Part shown: piece after piece, positions 1,269-43,099 of the stretch
Layout of the letters: each line of letters opens with the position of its first letter
Position numbering within the stretch: position 1 is the stretch's first letter
Assembly: GCF_963921235.1 (NCBI RefSeq)
Contig: NC_086128.1
Location: forward strand, 10,106,001 to 10,170,000
DNA length: 64,000 nt
From: Mobula hypostoma
Taxonomy: Eukaryota
Direction: 5' to 3'
Program-made: the position numbers and the translations under genes
The notes under the pieces: generated by a model
The model's database searches: none
Seen by the model: only the letters and a program-made list of their open reading frames with translations
What the model was told of the DNA's origin: nothing

Positions 1269-2501
1269 TTAACCAACACATGACACTTCCTGGCTTGACT
1301 GATTACTGAGGTTCTCCCTCACTTCCTCCCATGTCAGTCCTACTAACCCTAAATGGTTTACTGCTGCTTTTACCACCAGCTGAATTTTGTCACTTTTTGA
1401 CTTTACCTCAGCAGTACTATTAATCACTCCTGCAATGAATGTTACTAGAGCCTTTTTGTCTACATAAATCCTGTCATTTGTGCTTTGTTGCATCTCTCGT
1501 ATCCCTATTGCTCCCTGTTCATTAGGAGCATTATTCTGTTCTCTTGACATTCTTACAGCTTCTGCATAAGTGATCTTTCTTTTCACTCTTATTTCTTGAA
1601 TTTTAGTCTCCCGTCTCACAACCTCACACCCACTATATGCAACATTATGAGCTCCTCCACAATTGCAGCATTTTGGTTGAACTCCTGTTCCACACTTTCC
1701 ATATTCATGATCACCCCCACATCTAGCACATCTCCTCTGCCTTTTACAGTTTTTAGCCACGTGTCCAAACCTTTGACAATTATAGCACCTCAATGGCTTT
1801 GGCACATACGCCCTTACTGGGTAACTCATGAAACCCAGGAACACCTTCCTTGGCACTCTTTCTTCTTCAAATTCAATCAATACTGATTCACTTTCCTTTT
1901 TCACTCCCTCCTTTGTTGTTTTCAGTCTTTGAACATTCATTACTTTCCCTCCTTTGATATTCCTCTTGATCTCCTCCATATTTATACTCATTGGTATCCC
2001 CATGATCACTCCTTTACAACCACTGTTTTGTGCTCCCACCCTCCCAGTGTATTCCACCTTGCATTTTCCTATCTCTTTTAGCTTGAGTGCTTTCTCAAGT
2101 TGTTCCTCACTCGCACATCTTACCAATAAGTTGCCATCATTAAGGACTTTTGCAAATACTATTTCCCCTATCTTATTTGTCAGAGTTGTTGTTAGCACAA
2201 ACGGGTTAATTTTCTTCATATGTCCCTGAGCCTTCTCATTAAACCTAATTATGACAACACCTCCTCTCTGAGCTTGTTCATCTTCCTCACTTTCAGAGCT
2301 TTCTCCACCATCATTTCTTATTCTTTTATTCCCTTTGTCTTGGTTTTTATTCATCCGACCCCTCACTACCTCCTCATTCCCTTTATTTCTCCCTTCACAA
2401 TAATCCACCTCTCCCCAGCTGCCTACCTCTGGTCCCAAGTCTCTATCCCTCTCCTTCTCCACTTTCTTTCCCTCAACCCCACCTCTTATCTTGTCCGCCA
2501 T
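1269..2501 (-). CDS. LINE ORF1, gag-like nucleic-acid-binding protein (~410 aa from ATG MADKIRGG)
   Basis: Uninterrupted ORF with PLRCYNCQRFGHVAKNC, RCARCGGDHEYGKC and KCCNCGGAHNVAYSGC zinc knuckles and an ITYAEA motif. The ORF-track start at 2717 is probably 5'UTR read-through. Confidence 0.88.
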   Translation of the reverse strand: MADKIRGGVEGKKVEKERDRDLGPEVGSWGEVDYCEGRNKGNEEVVRGRMNKNQDKGNKRIRNDGGESSESEEDEQAQRGGVVIIRFNEKAQGHMKKINPFVLTTTLTNKIGEIVFAKVLNDGNLLVRCASEEQLEKALKLKEIGKCKVEYTGRVGAQNSGCKGVIMGIPMSINMEEIKRNIKGGKVMNVQRLKTTKEGVKKESESVLIEFEEERVPRKVFLGFMSYPVRAYVPKPLRCYNCQRFGHVAKNCKRQRRCARCGGDHEYGKCGTGVQPKCCNCGGAHNVAYSGCEVVRRETKIQEIRVKRKITYAEAVRMSREQNNAPNEQGAIGIREMQQSTNDRIYVDKKALVTFIAGVINSTAEVKSKSDKIQLVVKAAVNHLGLVGLTWEEVRENLSNQSSQEVSCVG

Positions 2502-2806
2502 TACCGGACCCACACGACCCCCTCCCAGCAATTTCCGTTCCTTCCCCACTCTCTTTCCCTCAACAGGTTCCAAAACACACTCACACATCAAGCAAAACAC
2601 AGCCAGCTTCCAGCAGCAGCCCACACTCCCCTTGACCCCACCGATTCTCTGCCCTGAACGAAGATGAACAAAACAGAGAGAACTTAACCAGAGAAACAAA
2701 ACAAGGCACAGGTGCACTGATAACTAAAATGAGACACAGGTGGAAATTATCAACAGATGAGTGGGGGGGGTGGGGGGGGTGTAGGAGCTTGGTGCCTGGA
2801 GGACTC

Positions 2807-2929: not shown

Positions 2930-4582
2930 CTAAAGCAAAAACTTATCAGCTTCCTCTTAATAATTTCTCCTTTGGCTCCACCCACTTCCTTCAAACTAAA
3001 GGTGTAGCCATGGGCACCCATATGGGTCCCAGCTATGCCTGCCTGTTTGTTGGCTATGTAGAACAGTCCATGTTCCAAGCCTATACTGGTATCCGCCCCC
3101 CACTTTTCCTTCACTACATCGACGACTGCATTGGCGCTGCTTCCTGCATGCATGCTGAGCTTGTTGACTTCATCAACTTTGCCTCCAACTTTCACCCTGC
3201 CCTCAAATTTACCTGGTCCATTTCCGACACCTCCCTCCCCTTTCTTGATCTTTCTGTCTCTATATCTGGAGACAGCTTATCTACTCATGTCTACTATGAG
3301 TCTACTGACTCTCACAACTATCTGGACTATTCCTCTTCTCACCCTGTCTCTTGCAAAAATGCCATCCCCTTCTCTCAATTCCTCCATCTCCGCTGCATCT
3401 GCTCTTAGGATGAGGCTTTTCATTCCAGGACGAGGGAGATGTCCTCCTTTTTTAAAGAAAGGGGCTTCCCTTCCTCCACTACCAACTCTGCTCTCAAACG
3501 CATCTCTCCCATTTCACGCACATCTGCTCTCACCCCATCTTCCCGCCACCCCACTAGGGATAGGGTTCCCCTTGTCCTCACCTACCATCCCACCAGCCTC
3601 CGGGTCCAACATATAATTATCCATAACTTCCACCACCTCCAACGGGATCCCACCACCAAGCACCTCTTTCCCTCCCCCTCACTTTCTGCTTTCTGCAGGG
3701 ATCGCTCCCTACGCGACTCCCTTGTCCATTTGTTTCCCCCCCCCCCACCATCCCTTCCCACCGATCTCTCCTGGCACTTATCCTTGTAAGCGGAACAAGT
3801 GCTACACATGTCCTTACACTTCCTCCCTCACCACCATTCAGGGCCCCAGACAGTCCTTCCAGGTGAGGCGACACTTCACTTGTGAGTCGGCTGGGGTGAT
3901 ATACTGCGTACAGTGCTCCCGATGTGGCCTTCTATATATTGGTGAGACCTGACGCAAACTGGGAGACCATTTCGCTGAACACCTATGCTCTGTCCGCCAG
4001 AGGAAGCAGGATCTCCCAGTGGCCACACATTTTAATTCCACGTTCCATTCCCATTCTGATATGTCTATCCGCGGCTTCCTCTACTGTTGAGATGAAGCCA
4101 CACTCAGGTTGGAGGAACAAGTGTATTCCGTCTGGGTAGCCTCCAACTTGATGGCATCAACATTGATTTCTCTAACTTCCGTTAATGCTCCTCCTCTCCT
4201 TCTTACCCCATCCCTCCTATTTATTTTATTTTATCTTATTTTTTGTTTGTTTATTTTCTACTTCTCTTTTTCCTTCTCACAATAACTCCTTGCCTGTTCT
4301 TCATCTTCCTCTGGTGCTCCCCTCCCGCTTTCTTTCTTCCCAGACCTTCCGTCCTATGATACTCCCCATTCTCCAGCCTTGTATTCTTTTTGCCAATCAA
4401 CTCCCCAGCTCTTAGCTTCATCCCTCCCCCTCCTGTCTCCTCCTATCATTTCGGGTCTCCCCCTCCCTCTCCCACTGTAGAAGACTGTACTTCTTCCTAT
4501 TGATGCTGCCTGGCCTGCTGTGCTCCACCAGCATTTTGTGTGTGTTGCTTGAATTTCCAGCATCTGCAGATTTTCTCGTGTT
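2930..4582 (+). mobile_element. Penelope-like element, 5'-truncated (RT C-terminus, GIY-YIG endonuclease, 3' pLTR)
   Basis: QTKGVAMGTHMGPSYA and YIDD RT motifs; VIYCVQCSRCGLLYIGET GIY-YIG domain; stops and frameshifts; terminal repeat GATGCTGCCTGGCCTGCTG...CAGCATCTGCAGA. Confidence 0.9.
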
Positions 4583-10677: not shown

Positions 10678-10812
10678 TTCTGAAGAAGGGTCTCAGCCCA
10701 AAATGTCAACTGTTTATTCATTTCCATGGATAATGCCTGACCTGCTGAGCTCCTCCAGCATTTTGTGTGTGTTGCTGTGGATTTCCAGTATCTGCAGAAG
10801 CTCTCGTGTTCT
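10678..10812 (+). mobile_element. Short Penelope pLTR-derived repeat with a degenerate hammerhead motif
   Basis: CTGAAGA-AGGGTCTCAGCCC-AAAA-TGTC followed by the same tail as at 4490-4582. Confidence 0.75.
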
Positions 10813-12065: not shown

Positions 12066-12835
12066 TAGCTGCCAGTCTCCACTGAGTCCCGGCCAACCAG
12101 AAAGCTGAGTGATCCCCAGGGATATGGGCCAGTAGAGATCACACAGCTATCCACTTGGCCGGGACCAAGTGGAGCCTAGAGGCCAGCGCAACAGCTTTGA
12201 AAAACAAAGAAAATCAACAAGAAGTTGCAAATAAGTGAAAGCAGCTTCCCAAATCCTGAAGGTTCAACCCCAGTTCTTTTTCTAAAGGAAGGAACACATC
12301 CCTGTTGCTCCAAGGTAGCCTGTTGTGCAATGTCCTTTCTACAATGTGACTTGTGAATGAAGTGCTCTCATTAGAAAGGCACTGGCTGTGATCACTTTCA
12401 TTATTTGACACCTTCTTCAAAAGGGGCTGTGATAATTAACAGTGAGGCCTGTGGTGGAACTGTCATTAAAAGGAGTCCTGATGCCTGTGTGGCCTTAAAG
12501 GACTGAGAGAATGTGCCCTTAATGGAGAGGGAGGGTCAAGAGTAACCTCAGGTTCTTGAGTCCTTACCTCCTTGGCAAACTGGCGTGTGGCAACAATGGA
12601 TATTCTTTACTGGTGGGAGTGGCAGCCTTGCAGGGCAGGTGAAGGCAAGGCTTGCATTACAGGGGCATCAGCAGTGAGTGTATTGTCATCCAACAGTAAT
12701 GGAGACTGATATGACCATTGGATGGTTTCTCGAGCACACATTTTGGCCTGGCACCTGTGGGGGACGGGGTTCTGTCCCTGGGCATCAACTGGGATGCTGA
12801 GAGGGTGGGAGGGTGACAAACAATAGTGGAGTATT

Positions 12836-12952
12836 GAGTCCTGCCAAAGGGTCTCGGCCCAAAATATTGACTGTATTCTTTTCCATAGAAGCTGCCTGGC
12901 CTGCTGAGTTCCTCTAGAATTTTGTGCGTGTTGCTCAGATTTTCTCTTGTTT
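12836..12952 (+). mobile_element. Short Penelope pLTR-derived repeat with a degenerate hammerhead
   Basis: GAGTC-CTGCCAA-AGGGTCTCGGCCC-AAAA-TATT-GACTG plus the family tail. Confidence 0.75.
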
Positions 12953-13289
12953 GTGAGTAGAGTATTGATGATAGTTTACCAGTTGTTTTGACTTGAATTA
13001 ACCTGGGTCAGCCTGAACAACAGCAGCAGAGAGCATCACGCAGGCTTTAACAACCTCAGAGAAGGGGAGTATAGGGTGAGCTTTCTGCAGGATTCCTATC
13101 TGCAAGATTCCTGCACCTATTCCTGGCTCTTGGGTTGGCAAGTTCGGGGGGGGTGGGGCGGTCTCCATGGGTTAACCGATTCTATGAACTGTGGGGTGTC
13201 TAACTTGTTATTCCCAGCCCATTACCCTGAGATCATTTGATACAAAGGCCTTGTGCCAATCTACTTCCTCCACCTCTTCATTCCCCTGG

Positions 13290-13436
13290 GTGAAGAGGAC
13301 GACGGAGACTGGACAGCAGAAGCAGAGGAGCAAATTTGAGATCGCTTCGAGTCAGTGGACTGGACCATATTCCAGGATACATCAGCGAAACTTAACTGAA
13401 TATGCCAGTGACTTCATAAGAGCGTGGGGACGAGTG
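13290..13436 (+). mobile_element. Rex1/Babar LINE ORF fragment, left of the satellite
   Basis: Translates with frameshifts as WTAEAEEQI*DRFESVDWTIFQDTS..EYASDFIRA..DECIPTKT, the endonuclease-to-RT linker typical of Rex1/Babar. Confidence 0.75.
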
Positions 13437-16400
13437 TATACCCACAAAAACACCCCGAGACTTCTACCCACAAAACATTCTGAGATTTATACACACAAAA
13501 ACACTGTGAGACTTATACCCACAAAATCATTCCAAGATCTATACCCACAAAACATTCCGAGACTTATACTCACAAAAACACACTGAGATTTATACCCACA
13601 AAAGCATTCTGAGACTTATACCCACAAAAACACTCCAAGATTTATACCCAGAAAAACACTATGAGACTTATACCCACAAAACATTCCAAGATCTATACCC
13701 ACAAAACATTCCGAGATTAATACCCACAAAAACACACTGAGACTTATACCCACAAAACATTCTGAGACTTATACCCACAAAAACACTCCGAGATTTATAC
13801 CCACAAAAACACTATGAGACTTATACCCACAAAACATTCCAAGATCTATACCCACAAAACATTCCGAGATTTATACCCACAAAAACATTCCGAGATTTAT
13901 ACACATAAAACATTCCGAGACTTATACCCACAAAAACACGCCGAGACTTATACCCACAAAACATTCTGAGATTTATACAGACAAAAACATTCCGAGATTT
14001 ATACCCACAAAAACATGCCAAGACTTATACCCACAAAAACATCCAAGATCTATACCCACAAAACATTCCGAGATTTACATCCACAAAAGCATTCTGAGAT
14101 TTATACCCACAAACCATTCCGAGATTTATACTGACAAACCATTCCGAGATTTATATCCACAAAAGCATTTCGAGATTTATACCCACAAAAATATTCTGAG
14201 ATTTATACCCACAAAAACACTATGAGACTTATACCCACAAAACATTCCAACATCGATACCCACAAAACATTCCGAGATTAATACCCACAAAAACACACTG
14301 AGACTTATACCCACAAAACATTCTGAGACTTATACCCACAAAAACACTCCGAGATTTATACCCACAAAAACACTATGAGACTTATACCCACAAAACATTC
14401 CAAGATCTATACCCACAAAACATTCCGAGATTTATACCCACAAAAACATTCCGAGATTTATACACATAAAACATTCCGAGACTTATACCCACAAAAACAC
14501 GCCGAGACTTATACCCACAAAACATTCTGAGATTTATACAGACAAAAACATTCCGAGATTTATACCCACAAAAACATGCCAAGACTTATACCCACAAAAA
14601 CATCCAAGATCTATACCCACAAAACATTCCGAGATTTACATCCACAAAAGCATTCTGAGATTTATACCCACAAACCATTCCGAGATTTATACTGACAAAC
14701 CATTCCGAGATTTATATCCACAAAAGCATTTCGAGATTTATACCCACAAAAATATTCTGAGATTTATACCCACAAAAACACTATGAGACTTATACCCACA
14801 AAACATTCCAACATCGATACCCACAAAACATTCAGAGATTTATACCCACAAAAACACGCCGAGACTAATACCCACAAAACATTCTGAGATTTCTACAGAC
14901 AAAAACATTCCGAGATTTATACCCACAAAAAAACTATGAGACTTATACCCACAAAAACACTATGAGACTTATACCCACAAAACATTCCAAGATCTATACC
15001 CACAAAACATTCCGAGATTTATACCCACAACAACATTCCGAGATTTATACCCACAAAACATTCCGAGAGCTATACCCACAAAAATACCCCGAGACTTATA
15101 CCCAGAAAACATTCTGCGATTTTTACCCACAATGCATTCCGAGACCTATACCCACAAAAACAGTCTGAGATTTATACCCACAAACCATTACGAGATTCAT
15201 ATCCACAAAAGCATTTTGAGATTTATACCCACAAAAACATTCCGAGACTTATACCCACAAAAACATTCCGAGATTTATACCCACAAAAAAATTCCGAGAC
15301 TTATACTCACAAAGACATTCCGAGATTTATAACCACAAAACATTCTGAGACTTGTACCCAAAAAAACATTCCGAGATTTAAAACCAAAAAACATTCCGAG
15401 AGTTATATCCACAAAAACACTCCAAGATTTATACCCAGAAAAACACTATGAGACTTATACCCACAAAACATTCCAAGATCTATACCCACAAAACATTCCG
15501 AGATTTATACTCACAAAAACACACTGAGATTTATACCCACAAAACATTCTGAGACTTATACCCACAAAAACACTCCAAGATTTATACCCAGAAAAACACT
15601 ATGAGACTTATACCCACAAAACATTCCAAGATCTATACCCACAAAACATTCCGAGATTAATACCCACAAAAACACACTGAGACTTATACCCACAAAACAT
15701 TCTGAGACTTATACCCACAAAAACACTCCGAGATTTATACCCACAAAAACACTATGAGACTTATACCCACAAAACATTCCAAGATCTATACCCACAAAAC
15801 ATTCCGAGATTTATACCCACAAAAACATTCCGAGATTTATACCCACAAACCATTACGAGATTCATATCCACAAAAGCATTTTGAGATTTATACCCACAAA
15901 AACATTCCGAGACTTATACCCACAAAAACATTCCGAGATTTATACCCACAAAAAAATTCCGAGACTTATACTCACAAAGACATTCCGAGATTTATAACCA
16001 CAAAACATTCTGAGACTTGTACCCAAAAAAACATTCCGAGATTTAAAACCAAAAAACATTCCGAGAGTTATATCCACAAAAACACTCCAAGATTTATACC
16101 CAGAAAAACACTATGAGACTTATACCCACAAAACATTCCAAGATCTATACCCACAAAACATTCCGAGATTTATACTCACAAAAACACACTGAGATTTATA
16201 CCCACAAAACATTCTGAGACTTATACCCACAAAAACACTCCAAGATTTATACCCAGAAAAACACTATGAGACTTATACCCACAAAACATTCCAAGATCTA
16301 TACCCACAAAACATTCCGAGATTAATACCCACAAAAACACACTGAGACTTATACCCACAAAACATTCTGAGACTTATACCCACAAAAACACTCCGAGATT

Positions 16401-19400
16401 TATACCCACAAAAACACTATGAGACTTATACCCACAAAACATTCCAAGATCTATACCCACAAAACATTCCGAGATTTATACCCACAAAAACATTCCTAGA
16501 TTTATACACATAAAACATTCCGAGACTTATACCCACAAAAACACGCCGAGACTTATACCCACAAAACATTCTGAGATTTATACAGACAAAAACATTCCGA
16601 GATTTATACCCACAAAAACATGCCAAGACTTATACCCACAAAAACACTCCGAGATTTATACCCATAAAACATTCCGAGACTTATACCCACAAAAACATCC
16701 AAGATCTATACCCACAAAACATTCCGAGATTTACACCCACAAAAGCATTCTGAGATTTATACCCACAAACCATTCCGAGATTTATACTGACAAACCATTC
16801 CGAGATTTATATCCACAAAAGCATTTCGAGATTTATACCCACAAAAACACTCCGAGATTTATACCCATAAAACATTCCGAGACTTATACCCACAAAAACA
16901 TCCAAGATCTATACCCACAAAACATTCCGAGATTTACACCCACAAAAGCATTCTGAGATTTATACCCACAAACCATTCCGAGATTTATACTGACAAACCA
17001 TTCCGAGATTTATATCCACAAAAGCATTTCGAGATTTATACCCACAAAAATATTCTGAGATTTATACCCACAAAAACACTATGAGACTTATACCCACAAA
17101 ACAGTCCAACATCGATACCCACAAAACATTCAGAGATTTATACCCACAAAAACACGCCGAGACTTATACCCACAAAACATTCTGAGATTTATACAGACAA
17201 AAACATTCCGAGATTTATACCCACAAAAAAACTATGAGACTTATACCCACAAAAACACTATGAGACTTATACCCACAAAACATTCCAAGATCTATACCCA
17301 CAAAACATTCCGAGATTTATACCCACAAAACATTCTGAGAATTAGACCCACAAAAACACCCTGAGACTGATACTCACAAAAACACCCTGAGACTTATAAC
17401 CACAAAACATTCTGAGATTTATACCCACAAAAACATGCCAAGACTTATACCCACAAAAACACCCCGAGATGTATACCCACAAAACATTCCGAGACTTATA
17501 CCCACAAAAACATCCAAGATCTATACCCACAAAACATTCTGAGATTTACACTCACAAAAGCATTCTGAGATTTATACCCACAAACCATTCCGAGATTTAT
17601 AGCCACAAACCATTCCGAGATTTATATCCACAAAAGCATTTCGAGATTTATACCCACAAATATATTCCGAGATTTATACCCAAAAAAACACTATGAGACT
17701 TATACCCACAAAACATTCCAACATCGATACAGGCAAAACATTCCGAGATTTATACCCACAAAAACATTTCAAGATTTATACCCACAAAACATTCCGAGAC
17801 TTATACCCACAAAAACACTGCGAAATTTATAGCCACAGAAACACTATGAGACTTATACCCACAAAACATTTCAAGATCTATACCCACAAAACATTCCGAG
17901 ACTTATACTCACAAAAACACACTGAGACTTATACCCACAAAACATTCTGAGATTTATACACACAAAAACATTCCGAGATTTATACCCACAAAAACATTCC
18001 GAGACTTATACCCACAAAAACACTCCGAGATTTATACCCACAAAAACAATATGAGACTTATACCCACAAAAACATCCAAGATCTCTACCCACAAAACATT
18101 CCGAGATTTATACCCCCAAAAACATTCCAAGATTTATACACACAAAAACATTCCGAGGTTTATACCCACAAAAACATTCCGAGACTTATACCCACAAAAA
18201 CACTCCGAGATTTATACCCACAAAAACAATATGAGACTTATACCCACAAAAACATCCAAGATCTCTACCCACAAAACATTCCGAGATTTATACCCACAAA
18301 AACATTCCGAGATTTATACCCACAAAGCATTCCGAGATTTATATCCACAAAAGCATTCCGAGATTTATACCCACAAAGACATTCCGAGATTTATACCCAC
18401 AAACCATTCCGAGATTTATACCCACAAAAACGCTCCGAGATTTATACCCACAAAAACACTATGAGACTTATACCCACAAAGCATTCCAAGATCTATACCC
18501 ACAAAAGATTCCGAGATTTACACCCACAAAAACACTATAAGACTTATACCCACAAAACATTATGAGGTTTATACCCACAAAACATTCCAAGATTTATATC
18601 CACAAAAGCATTCCGAGATTTATACCCACAAAAACACCCCGAGACTTATACCCACAAAACATTCTGAGATTTATACCCTTAAAAACATTCCGAGATTTAC
18701 ACCCACAAAATATTCCGAGACTTATACTCACAAAAACAACCCCGAGACTTATACCCACAAAACATTCCGAGACTTATACTCACAAAAACACCCCGAGACT
18801 TATACCCACAAAACATTCTGAGATTTATACCCACAAAAACATTCCGAGATTTGTACCCACAAAAGCATTCCGAGATTTATACCCACAAAAACATTCCGAG
18901 ACTTATACCCACAAAAACACTATGAGACTTATACCCACAAAACAATCCAAGATCTATACCCACAAAACATTCCAAGATTTATACCCACAAAAACATACCG
19001 AGATTTATACCCACAAAACATTCCGAGATTTATATCCACAAAAGCATTCCGAGATTTATACCCACAAATACGTTCCGAGATTTATACCCACAAAAATATT
19101 CCGAGATTTATACCCACAAAAACATTCCGAGATTTATACCCACAAAACATTCCGAGACTTATACCCACAAAAACACTCCGAGATTTATACCCACAAAAAC
19201 ACTATGAGACTTATACCCACAAAGCATTCCAAGATCTATACCCACAAAAGATTCCGAGATTTACACCCACAAAAACACTATGAGACTTATACCCACAAAA
19301 CATTCTGAGATTTATACCCACAAAACATTCCGAGATTTATATCCACAAAAGCATTCCGAGATTTATACCCACAAAAACACCCCGAGACTTATACCCACAA

Positions 19401-22400
19401 AACATTCTGAGATTTATACCCTTAAAAACATTCCGAGATTTACACCCACAAAACATTCCGAGACTTATACTCACAGAAACAACCCCGAGACTTATACCCA
19501 CAAAACATTCCGAGACTTATACTCACAAAAACACCCCGAGACTTATACCCACAAAACATTCTGAGATTTATACCCACAAAAACATTCCGAGATTTGTACC
19601 CACAAAACATTCTGAGACCTATACCCACAAAAACATTCCGAGACTTGTACCCACAAAACACTATGAGACTTATACCCACAAAACAATCCAAGATCTATAC
19701 CCACAAAACATTCCAAGATTTATACCCACAAAAACATTCCGAGATTTATACCCACAAAACATTCCGAGACCTATACCCACAAAAACACCCCGAGACTTAT
19801 ACCCAGAAAACATTCTGCGATTTATACCCACAATGCATTCCGAGACCTATACCCACAAAAACATTCCGAGACATATACCCATAAAAACATCCAAGATTTA
19901 TACCCACAAAAACACTATGAGACGTATACCCACAAAACATTCCAAGATTTATACCCACAAAAACATTCCGAGATTTATACTCACAAAACATTCTGAGGCC
20001 TATACCCACATAAACATTCCGAGATTTATACCCACAAACCATTCCGAGATTTATACCCACAAAAGCATTTTGAGATTTATAACCACAAAAACATTCCGAG
20101 ACTTATACCCACAAAAACATTCCGAGATTTATACCCACAAAAAATTCCGAGACTTATACTCACAAAGACATTCCGAGATTTATACCCACAAAACATTCTG
20201 AGTCTTGTACCCACAAAAACATACCGAGATTTAAAACCAAAAAAAAATTCCGAGACTTATACCCACAAAAACACTCCGAGATTTACACCCACAAAAACAC
20301 TATGAGACATATACCCACAAAACATTCCAAGATCTATACTCACAAAAGATTCTGAGATTTGCACCCATAAAAACACTATGAGACTTACACCCACAAAACA
20401 TTCCAAGATCTATACCCACAAAACATTCCGAGATTTACACCCACAATAGCATTCCGAGATTTATATGCACAAAAGTATTCTGAGATTTATACCCACAAAC
20501 CATTCCTAGATTTACATCTACAAAAGCATTCCGAAATTTATACACACAAAACATTCCGAGATTTACACCCACAAAAGCATTCCGAGATGTATACCCACAA
20601 AAGCATTTATAGATTTATACCCATAAACCATTCCGAGATTTATATCCATAAAAACATTCGGAAATTTATACCCACAAACCATTCCGAGATTTATATCCAC
20701 AAAAGTATTTTGAGATTTATACCCACAAAAACATGCCGAGAATTATACCCACAAAAACATTCCGAGATTTATACCCACAAAAAATTCCGACACTTATACT
20801 CACAAAGACATTCCGAGATTTATCCCCACAAAACATTCTGAGACTTATACCCACAAAAACATTCCGAGATTTGTACACACAAAACATTCCGAGACCTATA
20901 CCCACAAAAACATTCCGAGACTTATACCCACAAAAACATTCCGAGATTTATACCCACAAAACACTATGAGACTCATACCCACAAAACAATCCAAGATCTA
21001 TACCCACAAAATATTCCGAGATTTATACCCACAAAAACATTCCGAGATTTATACCCACAAAAACATTCCGAGATTTATACCCACAAAAACATTCTGAGAT
21101 TTATACCCACAAAACATTCCGAGACCTATACCCACAAAAATACCCTGAGACTTATACCCAGAAAACATTCTGCGATTTATACCCACAATGCATTCCGAGA
21201 CCTATACCAAGAAAAACATTCCGAGATTTATACCTACAAACCATTCCGAGATTTATACCCACAAAAGCATTTTGAGATTTATACCCACAAAAACATTCCG
21301 AGATTTATACCCACAAAAAAATTCCGAGACTTATACTCACAAAGACATTCCGAGATTTATACCCACAAAACATTCTGAGACTTGTACCCACAAAAACATT
21401 CCGAGATTTAAAACCAAAAAACATTCCGAGACTTATACCCACAAATACACTCCGAGATTTACACCCACAAAAACACTATGAGACTTATACCCACAAAACA
21501 TTCCAAGATCTATACCCACAAAACATTCCGAGATTTACACCCACAAAAGCATTCCGAGATTTATATGCACAAAAGTATTCCGAGATTTCTACCCACATAC
21601 CATTCCTAGATTTATATCTACAAAAGCATTCCGAAATTTATACCCACAAAACATTCCGAGATTTACACCCACAAATGCATTCCGAGATGTATAACCACAA
21701 AAGCATTCCGAGATTTATACCCATAAACCATTCCGAGATTTATATCCATAAAAGCATTGTGAAATTTGTACCCACAAACCATTCCGAAATTTATATCCAC
21801 AAAAGTATTTCGAGATTTATACCCACAAAAACATTCCGAGACTTATACCCACTAAAACATTCCGAGACTTATACTCACAAAGACATTCCGTGATTTATAC
21901 CCACAAAATATTCTGAGACTTATACCCACAAAAACATTCCGAGATTTATACCCACAAAAACATTCCGAGATTTATACCCACAAAACATTCCGAGACTTAT
22001 ACCCACAAAACATTCCGAGACTTGTACTCACAAAGACATTCCGAGATTTATACCCACAAACCATTCCGAGATTTATACCCACAAAAACGCTCCGAGATTT
22101 ATACCCACAAAAACACTATGAGACTTATACCCACAAAACATTCCAAGATCTATACCCACAAAACATTCCGAGATTTACACCCACAAAAACATTCCGAGAT
22201 TTATACCCACAAAACATTCCGAGACTTATACCCACAAAAACACCCCGTGACTTATCCCCACAAAACATTCTGAGATTTATAGCCACAAAAACATTCCGAG
22301 ATTTATACCCACAAAACATTCCGAGACTTATACCCACAAAAGCACCCGAGACCTTTCCCCATAAAACATTCTGAGATTTATACTCACAAAAACACCCCGA

Positions 22401-25400
22401 GACTTATACCACAAAACATTCCGAGATTTATACCCACAGAAATACTTCGAGATTTATACCCACAAAACACTATGAGACTTATACCCACAAAACATTCCCA
22501 GATCTATACCGACAAAACATTCGGAGATTTATACCCACAAAACATTCCAAGATTTATATCCACAAAAGCATTCCGAGATTTATACCCACAAAAACACCCC
22601 AAGAATTATACCCACAAGACATTCTGAGATTTATACCCACAAAAACATTCCGAGATTTATGCCCACAAAAACACTATGAGACTTATACCCACAAAATATT
22701 CCAAGATCTATACCCACAAAACATTCCGAGATTTACACCCACAAAAACTCTATGAGACTTATACCCACAAAATATTCCAAGATCTATACCCACAAAACAT
22801 TCCGAGATGTATACCCACAAAAGCATTCCGAGATTTATACCCATAAACCATTCCGAGATTTATATCCATAAAAGCATTCTGAAATTTATACCCACTAACC
22901 ATTCCGAGATTTATATCCACAAAAGTATTTCGAGATTTATACCCACAAAAACATTCCGAGACTTATCCCCACAAAAACATTCCGAGATTTATACCCACAA
23001 AACATTCCGACACTTATACTCACAAAAACATTCCGAGATTTATACCCACAAAACATTCTGAGACTTATACCCACTAAAACATTCCGAGAATTATACCCAC
23101 AAAGCATTCCGAGACTTATACTCACAAAGACATTCCGTGATTTATACCCACAAAACATTCCGAGACTTATACCCACAAAAACACTTCGAGATTTATACCC
23201 ACAAAAACACTATGAGACTTATACCCACAAAGCATTCCAAGATCTATACCCACAAAACTTTCCAAGATTTACACCCACAAAAACATTCCGAGATTTATAC
23301 CCACAAAAGCATTCCGAGATTTATACCCACAAACCATTCCGAGATTTATATCCACAAAAGCATTCCGAGATTTATACCCACAAATACGTTCCGAGATTTA
23401 TACCCACAAATCATTCCGAGACGTATACTCACAAAGACATTCCGAGATTTATACCCACAAACCATTCCGAGATTTATACCCACAAAAACGCTCCGAGATT
23501 TATACCCACAAAAACACTATGAGACTTATACCCACAAAGCATTCCAAGATCTATACCCACAAAAGATTCCGAGATTTACACCCACAAAAACACTATGAGA
23601 CTTATACCCACAAAACATTCCAAGATCTATACCCACAAAACATTCTGAGGTTTATACCCACAAAACATTCCAAGATTTATATCCACAAAAGCATTCCGAG
23701 ATTTATACCCACAAAAACACCCCGAGACTTATACCCACAAAACATTCTGAGATTTATACCCTTAAAAACATTCCGAGATTTACACCCACAAAACATTCCG
23801 AGACTTATACTCACAGAAACAACCCCGAGACTTATACCCACAAAACATTCCGAGACTTATACCCACAAAAACATTCCGAGACTTACACCCACAATGCATT
23901 CCGAGACTTATACTCACAGAAACACCCCGAGACTTATACCCACAAAACATTCCGAGATTTATACCCACTAAAATACTCCGAGATATATGCCCACAAAACA
24001 CAATGAGACTTATACCCACAAAACATTCCAAGATCAATACCGACAAAACATTCCAAGATTTATACCCACAAAACATTCCAAGATTTATATCCACAAAAGC
24101 ATTCCGAGATTTATACCCACAAAACATTCCGAGACTTATACCCACAAAAACACCCTGAGACCTTTCCCCATAAAACATTCTGAGATTTATACCTACAAAA
24201 ACACCCCGAGACTTATATCCACAAAACATTCTGAGATTTATACCCACAAAAACATTCCGAGATTTAGACCCACAAAACATTCCAAGACTTATACCCACAA
24301 AAACATTCCGAGACTTATACCCACAAAAATACTCTGAGATTTATTCCCTCAAAACACTATGAGACTTATACCCACAAAACATTCCAAGATCTATACCCAC
24401 AAAACATTCCGAGGTTTATACCCACAAAACATTCCAAGATCTATACCCACAAAACATTCCGAGGTTTATACCCACAAAACATTCCAAGATTTATATCCTC
24501 TAAAGCATTCCGAGATTTATACCCACAAAAACACCCCGAGACTTATACCCACAAAACATTCCAAGATTTATACCCACAAAACATTCTGAGATTTATACCC
24601 ACAAAAACATTCCGAGATTTGTACCCACAAAACATTCTGAGACCTATACCCACAAAAACATTCCGAGACTTGTACCCACAAAACACTATGAGACTTATAC
24701 CCACAAAACAATCCAAGATCTATACCCACAAAACATTCCAAGATTCATACCCACAAAAACATACCGAGATTTATACCCACAAAACATTCCGAGACCTATA
24801 CCCACAAAAACACCCCGAGACTTATACCCAGAAAACATTCTGCGATTTATACCCACAATGCATTCCGAGACCTATACCCACAAAAACATTCCGAGACATA
24901 TACCCATAAAAACATCCAAGATTTATACCCACAAAAACACTATGAGACGTATACCCACAAAACATTCCAAGATTTATACCCACAAAAACATTCCGAGATT
25001 TATACTCACAAAACATTCTGAGGCCTATACCCACATAAACATTCCGAGATTTATACCCACAAACCATTCCGAGATTTATACCCACAAAAGCATTTTGAGA
25101 TTGATAACCACAAAAACATTCCGAGACTTATACCCACAAAAACATTCCGAGATTTATACCCACAAAAAAATTCCGAGACTTATACTTACAAAGACATTCC
25201 GAGATTTATACCCACAAAACATTCTGAGTCTTGTACCCACAAAAGCATACCGAGATTTAAAACCAAAAAAAAATTCCGAGACTTATACCCACAAAAACAC
25301 TCTGAGATTTGCACCCACAAAAACACTATGAGACATATACCCACAAAACATTCCAAGATCTATACTCACAAAAGATTCTGAGATTTGCACCCATAAAAAC

Positions 25401-28346
25401 ACTATGAGACTTACACCCACAAAACATTCCAAGATCTATACCCACAAAACATTCCAAGATTTACACCCACAATAGCATTCCGAGATTTACATGCACAAAA
25501 GTATTCTGAGATTTATACCCACAAACCATTCCTAGATTTACATCTACAAAAGCATTCCGAAATTTATACCCACAAAACATTCCGAGATTTACACGTACAA
25601 AAGCATTCCGAGATGTATACCCACAAAAGCATTTAGAGATTTATACCCATAAACCATTCCGAGATTTGTATCCATAAAAGCATTCGGAAATTTATACCCA
25701 CAAACCATTCCGAGATTTATATCCACAAAAGTATTTTGAGATTTATACCCACAAAAACATGCCGAGAATTATACCCACAAAAACATTCCGAGATTTATAC
25801 CCACAAAAAATTCCGACACTTATACTCACAAAGACATTCCGAGATTTATCCCCACAAAACATTCTGAGACTTATACCCACAAAAACATTCCGAGATTTGT
25901 ACACACAAAACATTCCGAGACCTATACCCACAAAAACATTCCGAGACTTATACCCACAAAAACATTCCGAGATTTATACCCACAAAACACTATGAGACTC
26001 ATACCCACAAAACAATCCAAGATCTATACCCACAAAATATTCCGAGATTTATACCCACAAAAGCATTTTGAGATTTATACCCACAAAAACATTACGAGAC
26101 TTATACCCACAAAAACATTCTGAGATTTATACCCACAAAACATTCTGAGACCTATACCCACAAAAATACCCTGAGACTTATACCCAGAAAACATTCTGCG
26201 ATTTATACCCACAATGCATTCCGAGACCTATACCCACAAAAACAGTCTGAGATTTATACCCACAAACCATTCCGAGATTTATACCCACAAAAGCATTTTG
26301 AGATTTATACCCACAAAAACATTCCGAGATTTATACCCACAAAAAAATTCCGAGACTTATACTCACAAAGACATTCCGAGATTTATACCCACAAAACATT
26401 CTGAGACTTGTACCCACAAAAACATTCCGAGATTTAAAACCAAAAAACATTCCGAGACTTATACCCACAAATACACTCCGAGATTTACACCCACAAAAAC
26501 ACTATGAGACTTATACACACAAAACATTCCAAGATCTATACCCACAAAACATTCCGAGATTTACACCCACAAAAGCATTCCGAGATTTATATGCACAAAA
26601 GTATTCCGAGATTTATACCCACATACCATTCCTAGATTTATATCTACAAAAGCATTCCGAAATTTATACCCACAAAACATTCCGAGATTTACACCCACAA
26701 ATGCATTCCGAGATGTATAACCACAAAAGCATTCCGAGATTTATACCCATAAACCATTCCGAGATTTATATCCATAAAAGCATTCTGAAATTTGTACCCA
26801 CAAACCATTCCGAAATTTATATCCACAAAAGTATTTCGAGATTTATACCCACAAAAACATTCCGAGACTTATACCCACTAAAACATTCCGAGACTTATAC
26901 TCACAAAGACATTCCGTGATTTATACCCACAAAATATTCTGAGACTTATACCCAGAAAAACATTCCGAGATTTATACCCCAAAACGTTCCGAGATTTATA
27001 CCCCAAAACGTTCCGAGATTTATACCCACAAAACATTCCGAGACTTGTACTCACAAAGACATTCCGAGATTTATACCCACAAACCATTCCGAGATTTATA
27101 CCCACAAAAACGCTCCGAGATTTATACCCACAAAAACACTATGAGACTTATACCCACAAAACATTCCAAGATCTATACCCACAAAACATTCCGAGATTTA
27201 CACCCACAAAAACATTCCGAGATTTATACCCACAAAACATTCCGAGACTTATACCCACAAAAACACCCCGTGACTTATCCCCACAAAACATTCTGAGATT
27301 TATAGCCACAAAAACATTCCGAGATTTATACCCACAAAACATTCCGAGACTTATACCCACAAAAGCACCCGAGACCTTTCCCCATAAAACATTCTGAGAT
27401 TTATACTCACAAAAACACCCCGAGACTTATACCACAAAACATTCCGAGATTTATACCCACAAAAATACTTCGAGATTTATACCCACAAAACATTCCCAGA
27501 TCTATACCGACAAAACATTCGGAGATTTATACCCACAAAACATTCCAAGATTTATATCCACAAAAGCATTCCGAGATTTATACCCACAAAAACACCCCAA
27601 GAATTATACCCACAAGACATTCTGAGATTTATACCCACAAAAACATTCCGAGATTTATGCCCACAAAAACACTATGAGACTTATACCCACAAAATATTCC
27701 AAGATCTATACCCACAAAACATTCCGAGATTTACACCCACAAAAACTCTATGAGACTTATACCCACAAAATATTCTGAGATTTATACCCACAATAACATT
27801 CCGAGATTTATACCCACAAAACATTCCGAGACTTATACCCAGAAAAACTCCCCGAGACTTATACCCATAAAACATTCTGAGATTTATACCCACAAAAATA
27901 TTCCGAGATTTATACCCACAAAACATTCCGAGACCTATACCCACAAAAACACTCCGAGACCTATACCCACAAAAACATTCCGAGACTTATACCCACAAAA
28001 ACACTCCAAGATTTATACCCACAAAACACTATGAGACTTACACCCACAAAACATTCCAAGATGTATACCCACAAAACATTCTGAGATTTATACCCACAAA
28101 AGTATTCCGAGGTTTATACCCACAAACCATTCCGACATTTCTATCCATAAAAGCATTTCGAGATTTATACCCACAAAAACATTCCGAGATTTATACCCAC
28201 AAAAACATTCCGAGACTTATACCCACAAAACATTCCGAGATTCATACCCACAAAACATTCCGAGACTTATACTCACAAAAAGCATTCTGAGATTTATACC
28301 CACAAAAACATTCTGAGACTTATACCCCCAAAAGCATTCAGAGATT
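13432..28346 (+). repeat. Tandem satellite/minisatellite array, 25-26 bp monomer GAGA(T/C)TTATACCCACAAAA(A)CATTCC, roughly 580-590 copies
   Basis: Directly visible head-to-tail repeats over ~14.9 kb with no interruption by other elements; higher-order duplications present. Confidence 0.98.
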
Positions 28347-29800
28347 CCCTTAACCAGAAACCCTGGATGAACAAGGAGATTCGTAATCTGCTGAGGAGAA
28401 GATCTGTGGCATTTAGTGCTGGTGCCCTAGTGATATATAAGCCCAAGTACAGCCTCCAGAAGTTCATTGCAAGCATAAAAGAACAATGAAGACTAAACTG
28501 GAATCACATGTGGAAGCTTGAGAGCTGTGTCCGGAGCTGCACAGTATCGCTTCCTACAGTGTGCGATCAGGTAGTGCAAGTGACTATGACCCTTCACTCC
28601 CTGATCAGTTCAAGACCTTTTTGCACGCTTTGACAGGGAGCACGATGACATGCCCTCATCTCCATATGCCCCTTAAGTTTAGCCTCTGAGGCTGACATTC
28701 GGGTATCCATCAAGAGCATGAATCCACGAAAGGTGTTTGATCCAAATGTTGTACCTGGCCAAGTGCTAAATATCTGTGTGGACCAACTGGCTGGAGTACT
28801 TACAGACAGATGCGTCAATGTCTACCATCTGGTATTACTTACATCAATTGGAATGAAGTGCTTTGAAAGGCTGGTTATGGTGTGTATCGACTCCTGCCTC
28901 CGACACTACCTGAATCCACTTCAATTTGCCCATGGCCACACCAGGTCAACAGCAGATACGATCTCTCTCTCTCTTCACTCTGCTCTGGATCATCTTGACA
29001 ACAGGAACTCACACATCAGACTGCTCTTCATATAAGTTCAAAGTAAAATTATTATCAAAGTACATACATGTCACCATATACTACCTTGAGATTTATTTTC
29101 TTGTGGGCATTCACAGTAAGTACAAAGAATCAATGAAATGCTGCACACAAACAAAGACAGACAACCAACCAACAAAACTGTGCAAATGCAAAGAGAAAAC
29201 ATAATAATAATAAACCAATAAAGAAACAAAGAAATATTGAGAACATGAGTTGTAGAATACTTGAAATTGAGTCCATAGGTTGTGGAATCAGTTCAGTGTT
29301 GGGGTGAGTGAAGTTACCATTTACATCAACTACAACTCAGAGTTCAACACCATCATCCTATCTAAACTCATTATCAAGCTTCGAGACCTGGGCCTCTGTA
29401 CCTCCATCTGCAGCTGGATCCTCAACTATCTCATCAGTAGACCTCAATCAATGAAGATTGGTAACGACATCTCCTACTCGCTGACCAAAGGCACCGGTGC
29501 ACCTCAAGGCTGCCTGCTTAGCCCCCTGTTCTAAGCTGTACAGATGTGGACCGTATGGCAAAGCACAGCTCCCATGCCATATGCAAACTCGTCAATGACA
29601 CCACTGTTCATGGACGAATCACAGGTTACCTGCCTCAATGACTACCATCTGGTAGCACTTACATCAATTGGAATGAATCGCAAGTGGCAATGAGTCAGTT
29701 TGTTGGAGCAGAGTCGGACCTGGTTGAGTGCTGTCACAATAACAACCTCAAACTCAACGTCAACAGATAAAGAGCTGATTGTTGACTTCAGGAAGGGGAA
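28322..29800 (+). mobile_element. Rex1/Babar LINE ORF continuation (RT), degenerate, with nested insertions
   Basis: IPPKAFRDSLNQKPWMNKEIRNLL; DQLAGV; LTSIGMKCFERLV; LNPLQFA; TGAPQGCLLSPLF; KLVNDTT; KELIVDFRK. Confidence 0.88.
29033..29316 (-). mobile_element. LINE (Rex1/L2-type) 3' tail inserted antisense into the Rex1 RT
   Basis: Interrupts RLLFI|NYNSEFNTI; AT-rich tail resembling those at 49760 and 53995. Confidence 0.55.
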
Positions 29801-30490
29801 GGTTTCACTGCTAATATAATGGTTTCTCTGTAGTAGCAATGTTTGGGTCATGACTAGAGATAACGGGGGCTTTGGAATGTGCGCCATCCAATGAGAGGCA
29901 TGTTGCTCTTTCTTGTGGGTCTGAGAGAAGGGACTTCACGGTCTTTTGTCGGCGAGAGATGAAGAGAGAAGATGCGAGTGGACAGAGTTGATAGACCACC
30001 GGATGAAGTGGACCTACAGTGAGGGTCCGAGGGTCCGCAATGCTTGGAGGAGGTCGATGGGGAATGAATGGACGGAAATGTGAGCTCCAACGTGCACGTT
30101 AGACTGTTTTCATGTGAATGGGCCCTTTTTCTGTTTCTTTACTCCATCGTCGTTGTGGCTATCCCTCGAGGTCGAGGATGATGGTCTTCATTCTGTTGAT
30201 CTACTTATGGGCTCTCAAGTGGCTTATGAGTCCAATCTTGGCTTTGAAAGTTCTTCTGCATTCAGGACAGGTAGTTCCAGATGGTAGATCGGGCTTTGGT
30301 TGTTGCTGCCTCTTTCCATTTTCTTCTCTTTTCTTATAATTCTGCACATCTGTTGGCTTCAAAAGTTACTGTTCCTTCTTGGATGATGGCTTGCAATCAT
30401 CCTATAGTCTTTATAAACCTATAGTTAAATTAATAATCATAAAGCTCAGTCATTTAATTGCATATTGTGTACTGTTTGTTATTTTGTGTT
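29800..30490 (+). mobile_element. Partial LTR (same family as 37102-37685, opposite orientation), split by an RTE insertion
   Basis: 29800-30142 and 30415-30480 align to the reverse complement of 37240-37670. Confidence 0.7.
30143..30414 (-). mobile_element. RTE-clade LINE 3' fragment
   Basis: Minus-strand translation QQQPKPDLPSGTTCPECRRTFKAKIGLISHLRAHK*, the C-terminal C2H2 finger typical of RTE elements. Confidence 0.75.
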
Positions 30491-30734: not shown

Positions 30735-30867
30735 GCTGAAGAAGGGTCTCGGCCTGAAACATTGACTATTCATTCATTTCCATAGTTGTTGCCTTGCCCG
30801 CTGAGTTTCTCCAGCATTTTGTGCGTGTTGCTTTGGATTTCCAGCATCTGTGAATGTCTTGTGTTTA
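30735..30867 (+). mobile_element. Short Penelope pLTR-derived repeat with a hammerhead core
   Basis: CTGAAGA-AGGGTCTCGGCCT-GAAA-CATT-GAC plus the family tail. Confidence 0.75.
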
Positions 30868-33744: not shown

Positions 33745-35100
33745 CCATAAGACCATAAGATATAGGAGCAGAAGTAGGCCATTCAGCCCATCAAATTCTC
33801 CGCCATTCAATCATGGGCTGATCCAATTCTTCCAGTCATCCCTACTCCCCTGCCTTCTCCCCATACCCCTTGATGCCCTGGCTAATCAAGAACCTATCTA
33901 TCTCTGCCTTAAATGCACACAATGACTTGGTCCCCACAACCACTCTTGGTGACAAACTCCATAGATTTACCACCCTCTGACTAAAGTAATTTCTCTGCAT
34001 CTCTGTTCGAAATGGACATCCTTCAATCCTGAAGTCATGCTCACTTGACTTAGACTCCCCTACCATGGGAAATAACTTTGCCATATCTAATATGTTCAGG
34101 CCTTTTAACATTCGGAATGTTTCTATGAAATCCCCCCTCATTCTCCTGAACTCCAGGGAATAGAGCCCAAGAGCTGCCAGACGTTCTTCATACGGTAACC
34201 CTTTCATTCCTGGAATCATTCTCGTGAATCTTCTCTGAAGCCTTTCCAATGTCAGTATATCCTTTCTAAAATAAGGAGCCTAAAACTGCAGTCAATTCTC
34301 TAAGTATGGTCTCACGAGTGCCTTATAGAGCCACAACATCACATCCCTGCTCTTATATTCTATACCTCTAGAAATGAATGCCAACATTGCATTTTCCTTC
34401 TTCACAACCGACTCAACCCGGAGGTTAACCTTCAGGGTATCCTGCACAAGGACTCCCAAGTCCCTTTGCATCTCTGCATTTTGAATTCTCTCCCCATCTA
34501 AATAATAGTCTGCCTGTTTATTTCTTCCACCAAAGTGCATGACCATACACTTTCCAACATTGTATTTCATTTGCCACTTCTTTGCCCATTCCCCTAAACT
34601 ATCTAAGTCTCTCCGCAAGCTCACTGTTTCCTCAACACTACCCGCTCCTCCTCCTATCTTTGCATCATCGGCAAATTTAGCCTCAAATCTATTAATCCCA
34701 TAGTCCAAATCATTGACATACATCGTAAAAAGCAGCGGTCCCAACACCGACCCCTCTGGAACTCCACTGGTAACCGGCAGCCAGCCAGAATAGGATCCCT
34801 TTATTCCCACTCTCTGTTTTCTGCCGACCAGCCAATGATCCACCCACGCTAGTAACTCCCCTGTAATTCCATGGGATCTTATCTTGCTAAGCAGCCTCAT
34901 GTGTGGCACCTTGTCAAAGGCCTTCTGAAAATCCAAGTACACCACATCTCCTTTGTCTGCCCTGCTTGTAATTTCCTCAAAAAATTGCAGTAGGTTATTC
35001 AGGCAGAATTTTCCTTTCAGGAAACCATGCTGGCTTTGGCCCATCTTGTCATGTGTCTCCAGGTACTCCGTAATCTCATCCCTAACAATCAATTGCAACA
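33745..35100 (-). mobile_element. CR1 LINE, 5'-truncated (RT to 3' tail)
   Basis: SQHGF; [13 protein letters not shown]; GVPEGSVLGP; KFADD; short repeat tail at 33745. Confidence 0.93.
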
Positions 35101-35789
35101 ACAAGCTGTTCTTGATTGTCAGAGACTATTTGAGACGCACACCATTGGGAGCATTTAATAGGTAGTGGGAGCTTGTCCCCATTACCACCCCCGGCTATAA
35201 CCTTAAGGAACCAGATTTAATGTACAATACATTCAGGTTTATTGTGTGTCTGAAAGTATTTAGCAAGCATGGTTCAGCGATAGTATAATCAGTGACAATG
35301 AGACACAGCAGTACAAACCAGAGGTCAGCTAGGGTACAAAATTAAAACCTGATCCAACTCAAATTCTGATCGACCTTTGACTCATATCTGCAATCATATT
35401 TTGAACTCCCTGCCCTCCCTTCACCTGGCATCTCACTCTGGCCTGTGAGCACTCACTCCACCCTGCACCGAGAGCACCAGTCCTGAGTATCGCCCCAACC
35501 CTTAAGATGGCCTGCTCCGGTCTGGTCTGGCCCAGTCCAAGCGAGCCAAGGACATTCAGTTGGTTTCTAAGCCAACCCAGCTCCAGCCAACGCACTGAGG
35601 AACATCAGGTGACCAGGATTAACAATAACTCACCCGCTATATGGATGTACTTCCCTCGGCAACAAACAGACTGGAAGAACAGAGCTAGGTGAAGTATCAG
35701 AGGTGAAACTCTTAGCTCAGACTGGAGCAGGTGAGTATCATGTTGGACAACTGGGCACTTGAAATGAAGAGCAAGGAAGTTGATAAGAA

Positions 35790-42715: not shown

Positions 42716-43099
42716 GACTTACTAATGCCCAACTTGGGCTTCATGGTGGTTCCTTTCTCCAGCATTGGACCAAAGAGCAAAATTCCAGAGGTGAGGTGTG
42801 AGTGACAGCAAGGCAGCAGTTGATCAAGTGAGGCATTAGAGATCTTGTCAATCTTCCCAATGAACATCAAAGGGAAAACATTCCTTGTTTCCATGGTTCT
42901 TCATACACAAAGGAAGGTGGTTGTCACTGGAGGAAAACCAACCGTTTCTGGGGATATTAGTGCACAAATTATTCAAGGCGATGTCTTAGACACAAGATCT
43001 CAGCAACATTTAGGCATGAATTGAAAAGTAAAAGTGCCAACAAAAGACAGTCTGACCAATGCCATTCAATAGCATTACCACCACCAACATTATCAGCAA

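What the first reader, a model, noticed from the sequence alone, without database searches (positions are those of the whole stretch)
13290..28500. 15-kb satellite that appears to have grown in place from ~8 codons of a Rex1/Babar retrotransposon ORF
Seen in sequence: the left flank ends ...GAC GAG TGT ATA CCC ACA AAA ACA (DECIPTKT). The right flank begins ATA CCC CCA AAA GCA TTC AGA GAT TCC CTT AAC CAG AAA CCC TGG ATG AAC (IPPKAFRDSLNQKPWMN). Known: Rex1/Babar ORFs read roughly D.C.PTKT.R.FPNQKPWM in the endonuclease-RT linker. Removing the array therefore restores one continuous element, and the monomer is that element's own coding sequence. Inference: a 25-bp segment bounded by GAG microhomology (cGAGtgtatacccacaaaaacattcaGAGatt) was duplicated and then amplified to roughly 585 copies. 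Satellites derived from TEs are known in general. A case with both parental junctions intact and a seed inside coding sequence would be an unusually clean record of how a satellite begins.
Basis: partly seen in the sequence, partly recalled or inferred. Interest (0 to 1): 0.9.

Follow-up and report, generated by a model that had tools for sequence, protein, structure and literature searches.

The report
Tandem array grown inside dead LINE
A 14.9-kb run of 584 head-to-tail copies of a 26-base unit grew in place from one short piece of a dead retrotransposon's coding sequence; it is a very clean example of a process that is already well known.

Summary

The main interpretation also holds. The flanks are two adjacent pieces of one decayed, 5'-truncated non-LTR retrotransposon ORF. 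Joined through exactly one monomer, they match uninterrupted relatives without a gap, both as protein and as DNA from a Pristis pectinata copy. One monomer scores best, shuffled monomers never reach that score, and the observed phase is the best of 26 rotations.

A related species carries the same left junction and an orthologous right flank, so the array is older than that split. It later grew by copying multi-monomer blocks.

Three details do not hold or stay open:
- The unit is 26 bp, not 25. The 25-mers have lost one A.
- The proposed GAG microhomology is not supported, because the joint it predicts occurs nowhere inside the array.
- The Rex1/Babar label is only consistent with the data, and it is not shown that this is the only array of its kind.

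Tandem repeats that expand in place from transposable elements are well documented. The scan noted this same stretch before (s1-143939) and logged similar unchecked cases on other pieces of this genome. This is a new member of a known kind, of moderate-to-low interest.

The parts
13290..13436 (+). Left fragment of a 5'-truncated, decayed non-LTR retrotransposon ORF. It covers the region just upstream of the RT and ends in ..DEC.
   Evidence: tblastn finds P0005 residues 91-119 and P0003 residues 603-628 at 13310-13396. No homology was found further upstream. The frame has stops and frameshifts. Positions 13392-13428 are single-copy in reads at 90% likeness or more (table 3).
13437..28346 (+). 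Tandem array of 584 monomers of 26/25 bp, in the same orientation as the element. The unit is the element's own codons for (C)IPTKTFRD.
   Evidence: for the array; for register and phase.
13437..13462 (+). First monomer, continuous with the left parental sequence.
   Evidence: A contig of the related species (organism B) spans 12936-13526 and crosses this junction (records 21 and 29).
28321..28346 (+). Last monomer, continuous with the right parental sequence.
   Evidence: A 779-bp contig of organism A spans 28284-28800 (record 8).
28347..29801 (+). Right fragment of the same element: ..SLNQKPWMNKEIR.. followed by decayed RT. It has stops, about 290 bp with no match to the relative at roughly 29031-29325, and a short internal duplication (28811-28857 and 29631-29677).
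   Evidence: blastn against the P. pectinata copy matches up to window position 29801. Weak RVT_1 hit for 29271-29531, E 0.0017, below Pfam's cut-off.
19493..22555 (+). A 3-kb block of 120 monomers that recurs 5,025 bp downstream, at about 24518-27580, with 0.53 edits per monomer (about 2%).
   Evidence: the lag-197 minimum also shows.

Best explanation
A 5'-truncated and therefore dead copy of a non-LTR retrotransposon inserted here. One 26-bp stretch of its ORF, codons (C)IPTKTFRD just upstream of the conserved NQKPWM motif, was then duplicated in tandem at the DNA level. The breakpoints fall at 13436/13437 and 28346/28347, with no detectable microhomology. The duplicate was expanded, most likely by replication slippage and unequal exchange between sister chromatids or homologues. 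Variants arose through loss of one A (giving 25-mers) and through CpG decay. Later growth copied multi-monomer blocks of about 0.56-0.74 kb, 2.3-2.6 kb and 5.0 kb, reaching 584 units. The array existed before the species diverged from a relative whose flanks differ by about 3%. No function is implied; it is a neutral by-product. Shown: the array, the in-register junctions, homology of the monomer to the element, presence at the same locus in a second species, and the block duplications. Inferred: the order of events and the molecular mechanism of seeding and expansion.
For: The array is real. Nine relatives, including P0005 (annotated Pristis pectinata), P0003, P0007 and P0008, read ..C[VIL]P..... 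.[FC]P[NS].KPWMN.. with 10 residues between C and N (P0005 has S there), and one more (P0006) has the same spacing without the C. The window gives CIPTKTFRDSLNQKPWMN when joined through one monomer. The global DNA alignment to L001 (P. pectinata) scores 134, 181, 159 and 133 for 0, 1, 2 and 3 monomers and is gap-free across both junctions. Five hundred shuffled monomers give a mean of 151.6, sd 5.2 and maximum 170, and phase 0 is the best of 26 rotations. A 580-bp contig of organism B at single-copy depth crosses the left junction and runs 90 bp into the array, and a 783-bp contig of B matches the right flank from 28367. Flank differences total 70 in 2,258 bp. The sequence immediately left (13392-13428) and right (28432-28728) of the array is single-copy at 90% likeness or more. 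Other copies of the family read ..ACATTCCAGACATTCCCAAACCAAAAGCC before the KPWMN codons, with no array (loose ends at 28364). Among the runs served, only organisms A and B hold the array's words. Block duplications are shown.
Against: I could not obtain a consensus of the same subfamily from the same genome; the closest uninterrupted relative is only 17/26 identical over the monomer. The right junction in organism B is not bridged, because its contig starts at 28367, inside a high-copy part of the element. Summed contig depth over the array is 3.5-7 times what one 14.9-kb array would naively give. A simulation shows that overlapping short unitigs alone inflate this measure by anything from 0.7 to 6.2 times, so other arrays are neither shown nor excluded. 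No spanning read verified the array length.
Confidence: 0.8

Rival explanations
1. The array was not born at this copy. Either a master element already carried a short array at this ORF position and this insertion inherited it, or the array arose in another copy of the family and reached this one by ectopic recombination or gene conversion through the homologous flanks. Both routes would also leave in-register junctions.
For: In-register junctions cannot separate these routes from a local origin. Summed depth over the array is higher than a naive single-array expectation. First-stage notes list many arrays linked to transposable elements in this genome.
Against: The flanks next to the array are single-copy at 90% likeness or more. 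Contigs of other family copies show ordinary sequence at this site and no array. The excess depth is within the range expected from unitig overlap. The 298 array contigs laid are of the order of the 198-544 unitigs simulated from this array alone. Only a 0.01-0.03 share of the laid contigs runs on into unlike sequence.
Confidence: 0.1
2. One reading: slippage between two GAG (in fact CGAG) motifs 25 bp apart in the native sequence duplicated a 25-bp unit, which was then amplified.
For: The native sequence does carry CGAG twice, 25 bp apart (aCGAGtg...ttcCGAGatt), and 270 monomers are 25 bp long.
Against: This model predicts CGAGTG|TATACCC at every internal joint. GAGTGTATAC occurs 0 times inside the array, and the internal joints are GAGATT or GAGACT followed by TATACCC. 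The 25-mers differ from the 26-mers by one A of the A5 run, not at the joint. The observed phase fits the flanks best of all 26 rotations.
Confidence: 0.07
3. Assembly artefact: the array or its length was created by misassembly.
For: No spanning read was examined. Contigs of public runs break inside the array.
Against: Both junctions are present in contigs of organism A, and the left one is present in an independent species. Hundreds of distinct array contigs exist in the reads. Monomer variants and block structure are too diverse for a collapsed or echoed repeat.
Confidence: 0.02

Closest known systems
Single-locus minisatellites and satellites derived from transposable elements in the human genome (Ahmed & Liang 2012, PMC3389668)
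   Same: A short internal piece of a transposable element is duplicated in tandem and then expands locally. The repeat units are most similar to each other, and only part of the array is shared with related species. That paper also finds that the postulated initiation mechanisms explain only about 6% of cases.
   Different: Most human cases have 2-3 units. This one has 584 units and 14.9 kb, with multi-monomer block structure.
Satellite DNAs with similarity to LINE ORF2: PROsat (Phodopus), Pvc20 (Phoca) and the chicken HinfI/CR1 satellite (reviewed in PMC9659126)
   Same: The monomer derives from LINE coding sequence.
   Different: By my reading of that review, the link to the element there rests on sequence similarity alone. 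Here the parental copy is still attached on both sides, in register.
Internal VNTRs carried in the consensus of an element (L1PA, LTR12, as discussed in PMC3389668)
   Same: A tandem repeat inside an element.
   Different: Those repeats are part of the family consensus and travel with transposition. Here the relatives and other family copies examined have a single copy of the segment.
Double-insertion model of satellite origin (McGurk & Barbash 2018, PMC5932611)
   Same: A transposable element is the substrate for a new tandem array.
   Different: That model makes tandem dimers of whole elements by nested insertion. Here the unit is 26 bp of internal sequence, so a different seeding event is needed.

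Membership tests
Tandem repeat derived in place from a transposable element | Head-to-tail array of a short unit | tested here: met
Tandem repeat derived in place from a transposable element | The unit is homologous to an internal segment of the element | tested here: met
   In the element's frame the monomer reads IPTKTFRD. It aligns to LPSRTFKV in P0005 and IPTKNVRS in P0008 and is 17/26 identical in DNA to the P. pectinata copy. No shuffled monomer out of 500 fits as well.
Tandem repeat derived in place from a transposable element | Both flanks belong to the same element copy, adjacent and in register, so that one unit restores the element | tested here: met
   The score peaks at exactly one monomer, the alignment is gap-free across both junctions, and the observed phase is the best of 26.
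Tandem repeat derived in place from a transposable element | Single locus: no arrays of the same unit elsewhere | tested here: inconclusive
   The adjacent flanks are single-copy and no foreign junctions were listed. Summed depth is uninformative because of unitig overlap. No whole-genome search was possible.
Rex1/Babar clade of non-LTR retrotransposons | Placement of the RT within the Rex1/Babar clade by phylogeny | not testable with these tools
   No reference RT sequences of LINE clades were available. Pfam gives only a weak RVT_1 hit.
Rex1/Babar clade of non-LTR retrotransposons | RT motifs targeted by the Rex1-specific primers RTX1-F1 and RTX1-R3 (which encode FSSAFNT and SRLFLLR; PMC4635592) | tested here: inconclusive
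   The relative L002 has IDFSSAFNTI and the window element has INYNSEFNTI at 29331. A similar 3' fragment at 55952-56500(-), not shown to belong to the same family, has QSRLYFLRRL. The primers themselves do not match at 3 mismatches or fewer. This is consistent with Rex1 but does not diagnose it.
Classical satellite DNA (multi-locus, heterochromatic, very long arrays) | Many or very long arrays that make up a visible genome fraction | tested here: not met
   Within this window there is one 14.9-kb array. Its words occur only in two species among the runs served. The number of distinct array contigs is of the order expected from this one array. A better name is a large minisatellite or a young single-locus satellite.

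The most novel reading that the evidence does not exclude
This locus may be one instance of a genome-wide habit. First-stage notes on other pieces of the same genome list many 4-50-kb arrays said to have grown from short internal pieces of LINEs, LTRs and Penelope-like elements. If these hold up, this lineage expands short segments inside transposable elements into very long arrays far more often than mammals do. That would point to a lineage-specific property of replication or repair, and loci like this one, with both junctions intact and a dated orthologue, would be the calibration points.
Probability: 0.2. Interest if true: 0.6.

Novelty: new member of a known kind. Interest (0 to 1): 0.33.

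Why it matters
This locus shows how a long tandem array starts and grows. The seed, its exact breakpoints and the parental sequence on both sides are all still readable, and the same junction exists in a second species, so the array can be dated. The seeding duplication shows no microhomology and no hairpin potential. This adds one well-resolved case to the majority of such repeats whose initiation current models do not explain (PMC3389668). It does not reveal a new kind of element or process.

Tried and rejected
- The search for homologous proteins with the 55-aa stop-free right-flank piece found nothing, because its length filter excludes full-length relatives.
- The look-up of encoding contigs gave no DNA for P0007 or P0003. 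P0004's locus is truncated 5' of the junction, so it gave no information.
- No other copy of the same family spanning the junction exists in the window. The NQKPW-type motif occurs once, and the element at 237-602(-) belongs to a different family.
- A hairpin or slipped-strand structure as the driver of expansion is not supported: three monomers fold at 0 and -0.2 kcal/mol on the two strands, no better than shuffles.
- A divergence gradient from the edges to the centre is not seen: edits per monomer are 2.5-3.4 in all 40-monomer blocks.
- I first read the summed depth as evidence for 70-110 kb of this satellite in the genome. I withdrew that reading after a unitig simulation showed 0.7-6.2 times inflation from overlap alone.
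- Rfam and tRNA scans of the window found nothing.
- The search of earlier findings by sequence was blank.

Full report
**Observation**

Tandem Repeats Finder reports one array at 13437-28346 with period 26 (equally well 51), 584 copies and 81% matches. Segmenting it gives 584 monomers: 306 of 26 bp, 270 of 25 bp and eight of 24 or 27 bp. The consensus is TATACCCACAAAAACATTCCGAGATT, with a mean of 2.8 edits per monomer. The consensus with up to 3 mismatches matches 205 times on the + strand. The 200 matches listed lie inside the array, and none is expected by chance. The array is strongly C-over-G skewed (about -0.5) and lower in GC (about 0.36) than its surroundings. The 25-mers differ from the 26-mers by one A of the A5 run.

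**What the flanks are**

The right flank gives a stop-free 55-residue piece (28322-28486) reading IPPKAFRDSLNQKPWMNKEIRNLL.... The left flank reads WTAEAEEQI*DRFESVDWTIFQD..., followed by frameshifts, and ends in DEC.

An exhaustive phmmer search with the 55-aa piece found eight proteins. Seven are retrotransposon ORF fragments; the eighth, P0002, is unrelated repeat protein. A second search seeded with P0005 found five more fragments. P0005 is annotated as a Pristis pectinata protein.

Nine of these twelve relatives read ..C[VIL]P.....[FC]P[NS].KPWMN.. with exactly 10 residues between the C and the N (P0005 has S there). P0006 keeps the spacing without the C, P0001 has diverged there, and P0004 starts downstream of this point. 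P0005 also matches the window's left flank (residues 91-119 at 13310-13396). Joined through one monomer, the window reads CIPTKTFRDSLNQKPWMN, which has the same spacing.

No homology to the element is detectable upstream of about 13290-13310, so the copy is 5'-truncated. The right part continues to about 29801 as decayed RT. It has stops, about 290 bp with no match to the relative, and a small internal duplication. A Pfam RVT_1 hit for 29271-29531 is weak (E 0.0017, below the cut-off).

**Register test at the DNA level**

I aligned left flank + n consensus monomers + right flank to the uninterrupted P. pectinata copy (L001).
- Global scores are 134, 181, 159 and 133 for n = 0, 1, 2 and 3.
- With n = 1 the alignment has no gap across either junction.
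- Five hundred shuffles of the monomer gave a mean of 151.6, sd 5.2 and maximum 170; none reached 181.
- Of the 26 circular permutations of the monomer, the observed phase scores best.

The monomer is therefore the element's own sequence. Exactly one unit is native, and the breakpoints are 13436/13437 and 28346/28347.

**Seeding mechanism**

The native sequence does contain CGAG twice, 25 bp apart. Slippage between them would put CGAGTG|TATACCC at every internal joint. GAGTGTATAC occurs once in the window, at the parental left junction, and never inside the array. Internal joints are GAGATT|TATACCC (161) and GAGACT|TATACCC (114), with minor variants.

With the present sequence there is no microhomology at the breakpoints: G versus T on the left and C versus T on the right. 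Three monomers have no folding potential as single-stranded DNA on either strand. The seeding event therefore stays mechanistically unexplained. That is the usual situation for such repeats: in human data only about 6% fit the postulated mechanisms (PMC3389668).

**Growth**

Pairwise monomer distance averages 4.4 edits, about 17%.
- A block of 120 monomers (19493-22555) recurs 5,025 bp downstream with 0.53 edits per monomer, about 2%.
- Blocks of 562, 664 and 742 bp recur at about 4-5% divergence.
- Blocks at offsets of 2.3 and 2.6 kb recur at about 5%.

Divergence from the consensus is flat along the array. About 55% of monomers keep the CpG of CCGAG; the commonest variants are TG and CA. The array therefore grew largely by duplication of multi-monomer segments, as unequal exchange would produce, and it has aged since.

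**Evidence from reads**

Public runs of the source species (organism A) and of a relative (organism B) hold the locus.
- In organism B, a 580-bp contig at single-copy depth spans 12936-13526. It crosses the left junction and runs 90 bp into the array.
- Another organism B contig matches the right flank from 28367, with 24 differences in 434 bp. It starts inside a high-copy part of the element, so the right junction is not bridged in B.
- Flank differences between A and B total 70 in 2,258 bp, about 3%.
- The sequence immediately beside the array is single-copy at 90% likeness or more (13392-13428 and 28432-28728), so there are no close paralogues of this locus.
- Contigs of other family copies that match the KPWMN codons continue upstream as ordinary element sequence, not as array (loose ends at 28364).
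- Among the runs served, only organisms A and B hold the array's words: 0.32-0.38 of words in A and 0.06-0.08 in B.

**Is it the only array?**

Summed contig depth over the array suggested 3.5-7 times more satellite than 14.9 kb. I simulated k=31 unitigs from the assembled array. Summing depth times length over overlapping short unitigs inflates the measure by 0.7 to 6.2 times, depending on the shortest contig kept. The array alone yields 198-544 unitigs, and 298 contigs were laid. The depth therefore gives no evidence for other arrays and does not exclude them. A whole-genome search is needed.

**Family label**

The Rex1-specific primers quoted in PMC4635592 encode FSSAFNT and SRLFLLR.
- A relative (L002) has IDFSSAFNTI.
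- The window element has INYNSEFNTI.
- A similar 3' fragment at 55952-56500(-), whose family I did not establish, has QSRLYFLRRL.
- The primers do not match the DNA at 3 mismatches or fewer.

This is consistent with a Rex1-like element, but no phylogeny was possible.

**Comparison with what is known**

Tandem repeats derived from transposable elements that expand in place are common. They make up 23% of human minisatellites and satellites, mostly at single loci (PMC3389668). Satellites similar to LINE ORF2 sequence are also recorded: PROsat, Pvc20 and the chicken HinfI/CR1 satellite (PMC9659126).

What is unusual here is the degree and the clarity, not the kind:
- 584 units;
- both parental junctions in register;
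- an orthologue in a second species.

First-stage notes list many similar claims on other pieces of this genome. I did not check them. If true, they make this locus less singular and the genome-wide pattern more interesting.

**Verdict**

The origin in place from the element's own coding sequence holds. The 25-bp GAG model does not, and the Rex1 label and the uniqueness of the array are open. This is a new member of a known kind.

Noticed in passing
window 12777-13044; weaker copies near 4483-4549, 10686-10776, 30742-30832, 48472-48565, 43930-44017(-) and 52781-52837(-): A very high-copy short interspersed repeat lies just upstream of the element. Summed contig depth is about 1.3 million against about 10 for single-copy sequence, in both species. 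Neither ARAGORN nor Rfam recognises a tRNA-like or known RNA part.
   Followed up: partly
window 54878-59640 (+): A long LINE of a different family with largely open frames: an ORF1-like 318-aa frame, an endonuclease (Exo_endo_phos, E 1.7e-19) and RT pieces. Its 5' part is interrupted by a minus-strand 3' fragment of another element at 55952-56500, whose product hits Pfam ALKBH8_N (E 5.5e-12). That Pfam model seems to match a LINE C-terminal region.
   Followed up: partly
window 62250-63533 (+), 34292-35104 (-), 42226-42894 (-): Three further RT open frames (RVT_1, E 2e-28, 3e-21 and 5e-14) show that the window is dense in LINE copies of several families.
   Followed up: no
window 1269-2717 (-): A 482-aa open frame with a CCHC zinc knuckle, possibly gag-like and part of an LTR or other retroelement.
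   Followed up: no
window 12277-12381 (-): A faint match (E 0.02) to the same ..RTFPNQKPWMN.. linker region on the opposite strand. It may be a much older remnant of a related element.
   Followed up: no
window 28284-28800 in organism A, and 28367-28800 in organism B: The contigs covering the right flank have about half the depth of the left-flank contigs in the same runs (3.75 against about 9-10 in X1; 6.4 against about 11 in X5). This could reflect heterozygosity or chance at low coverage; I did not resolve it.
   Followed up: no
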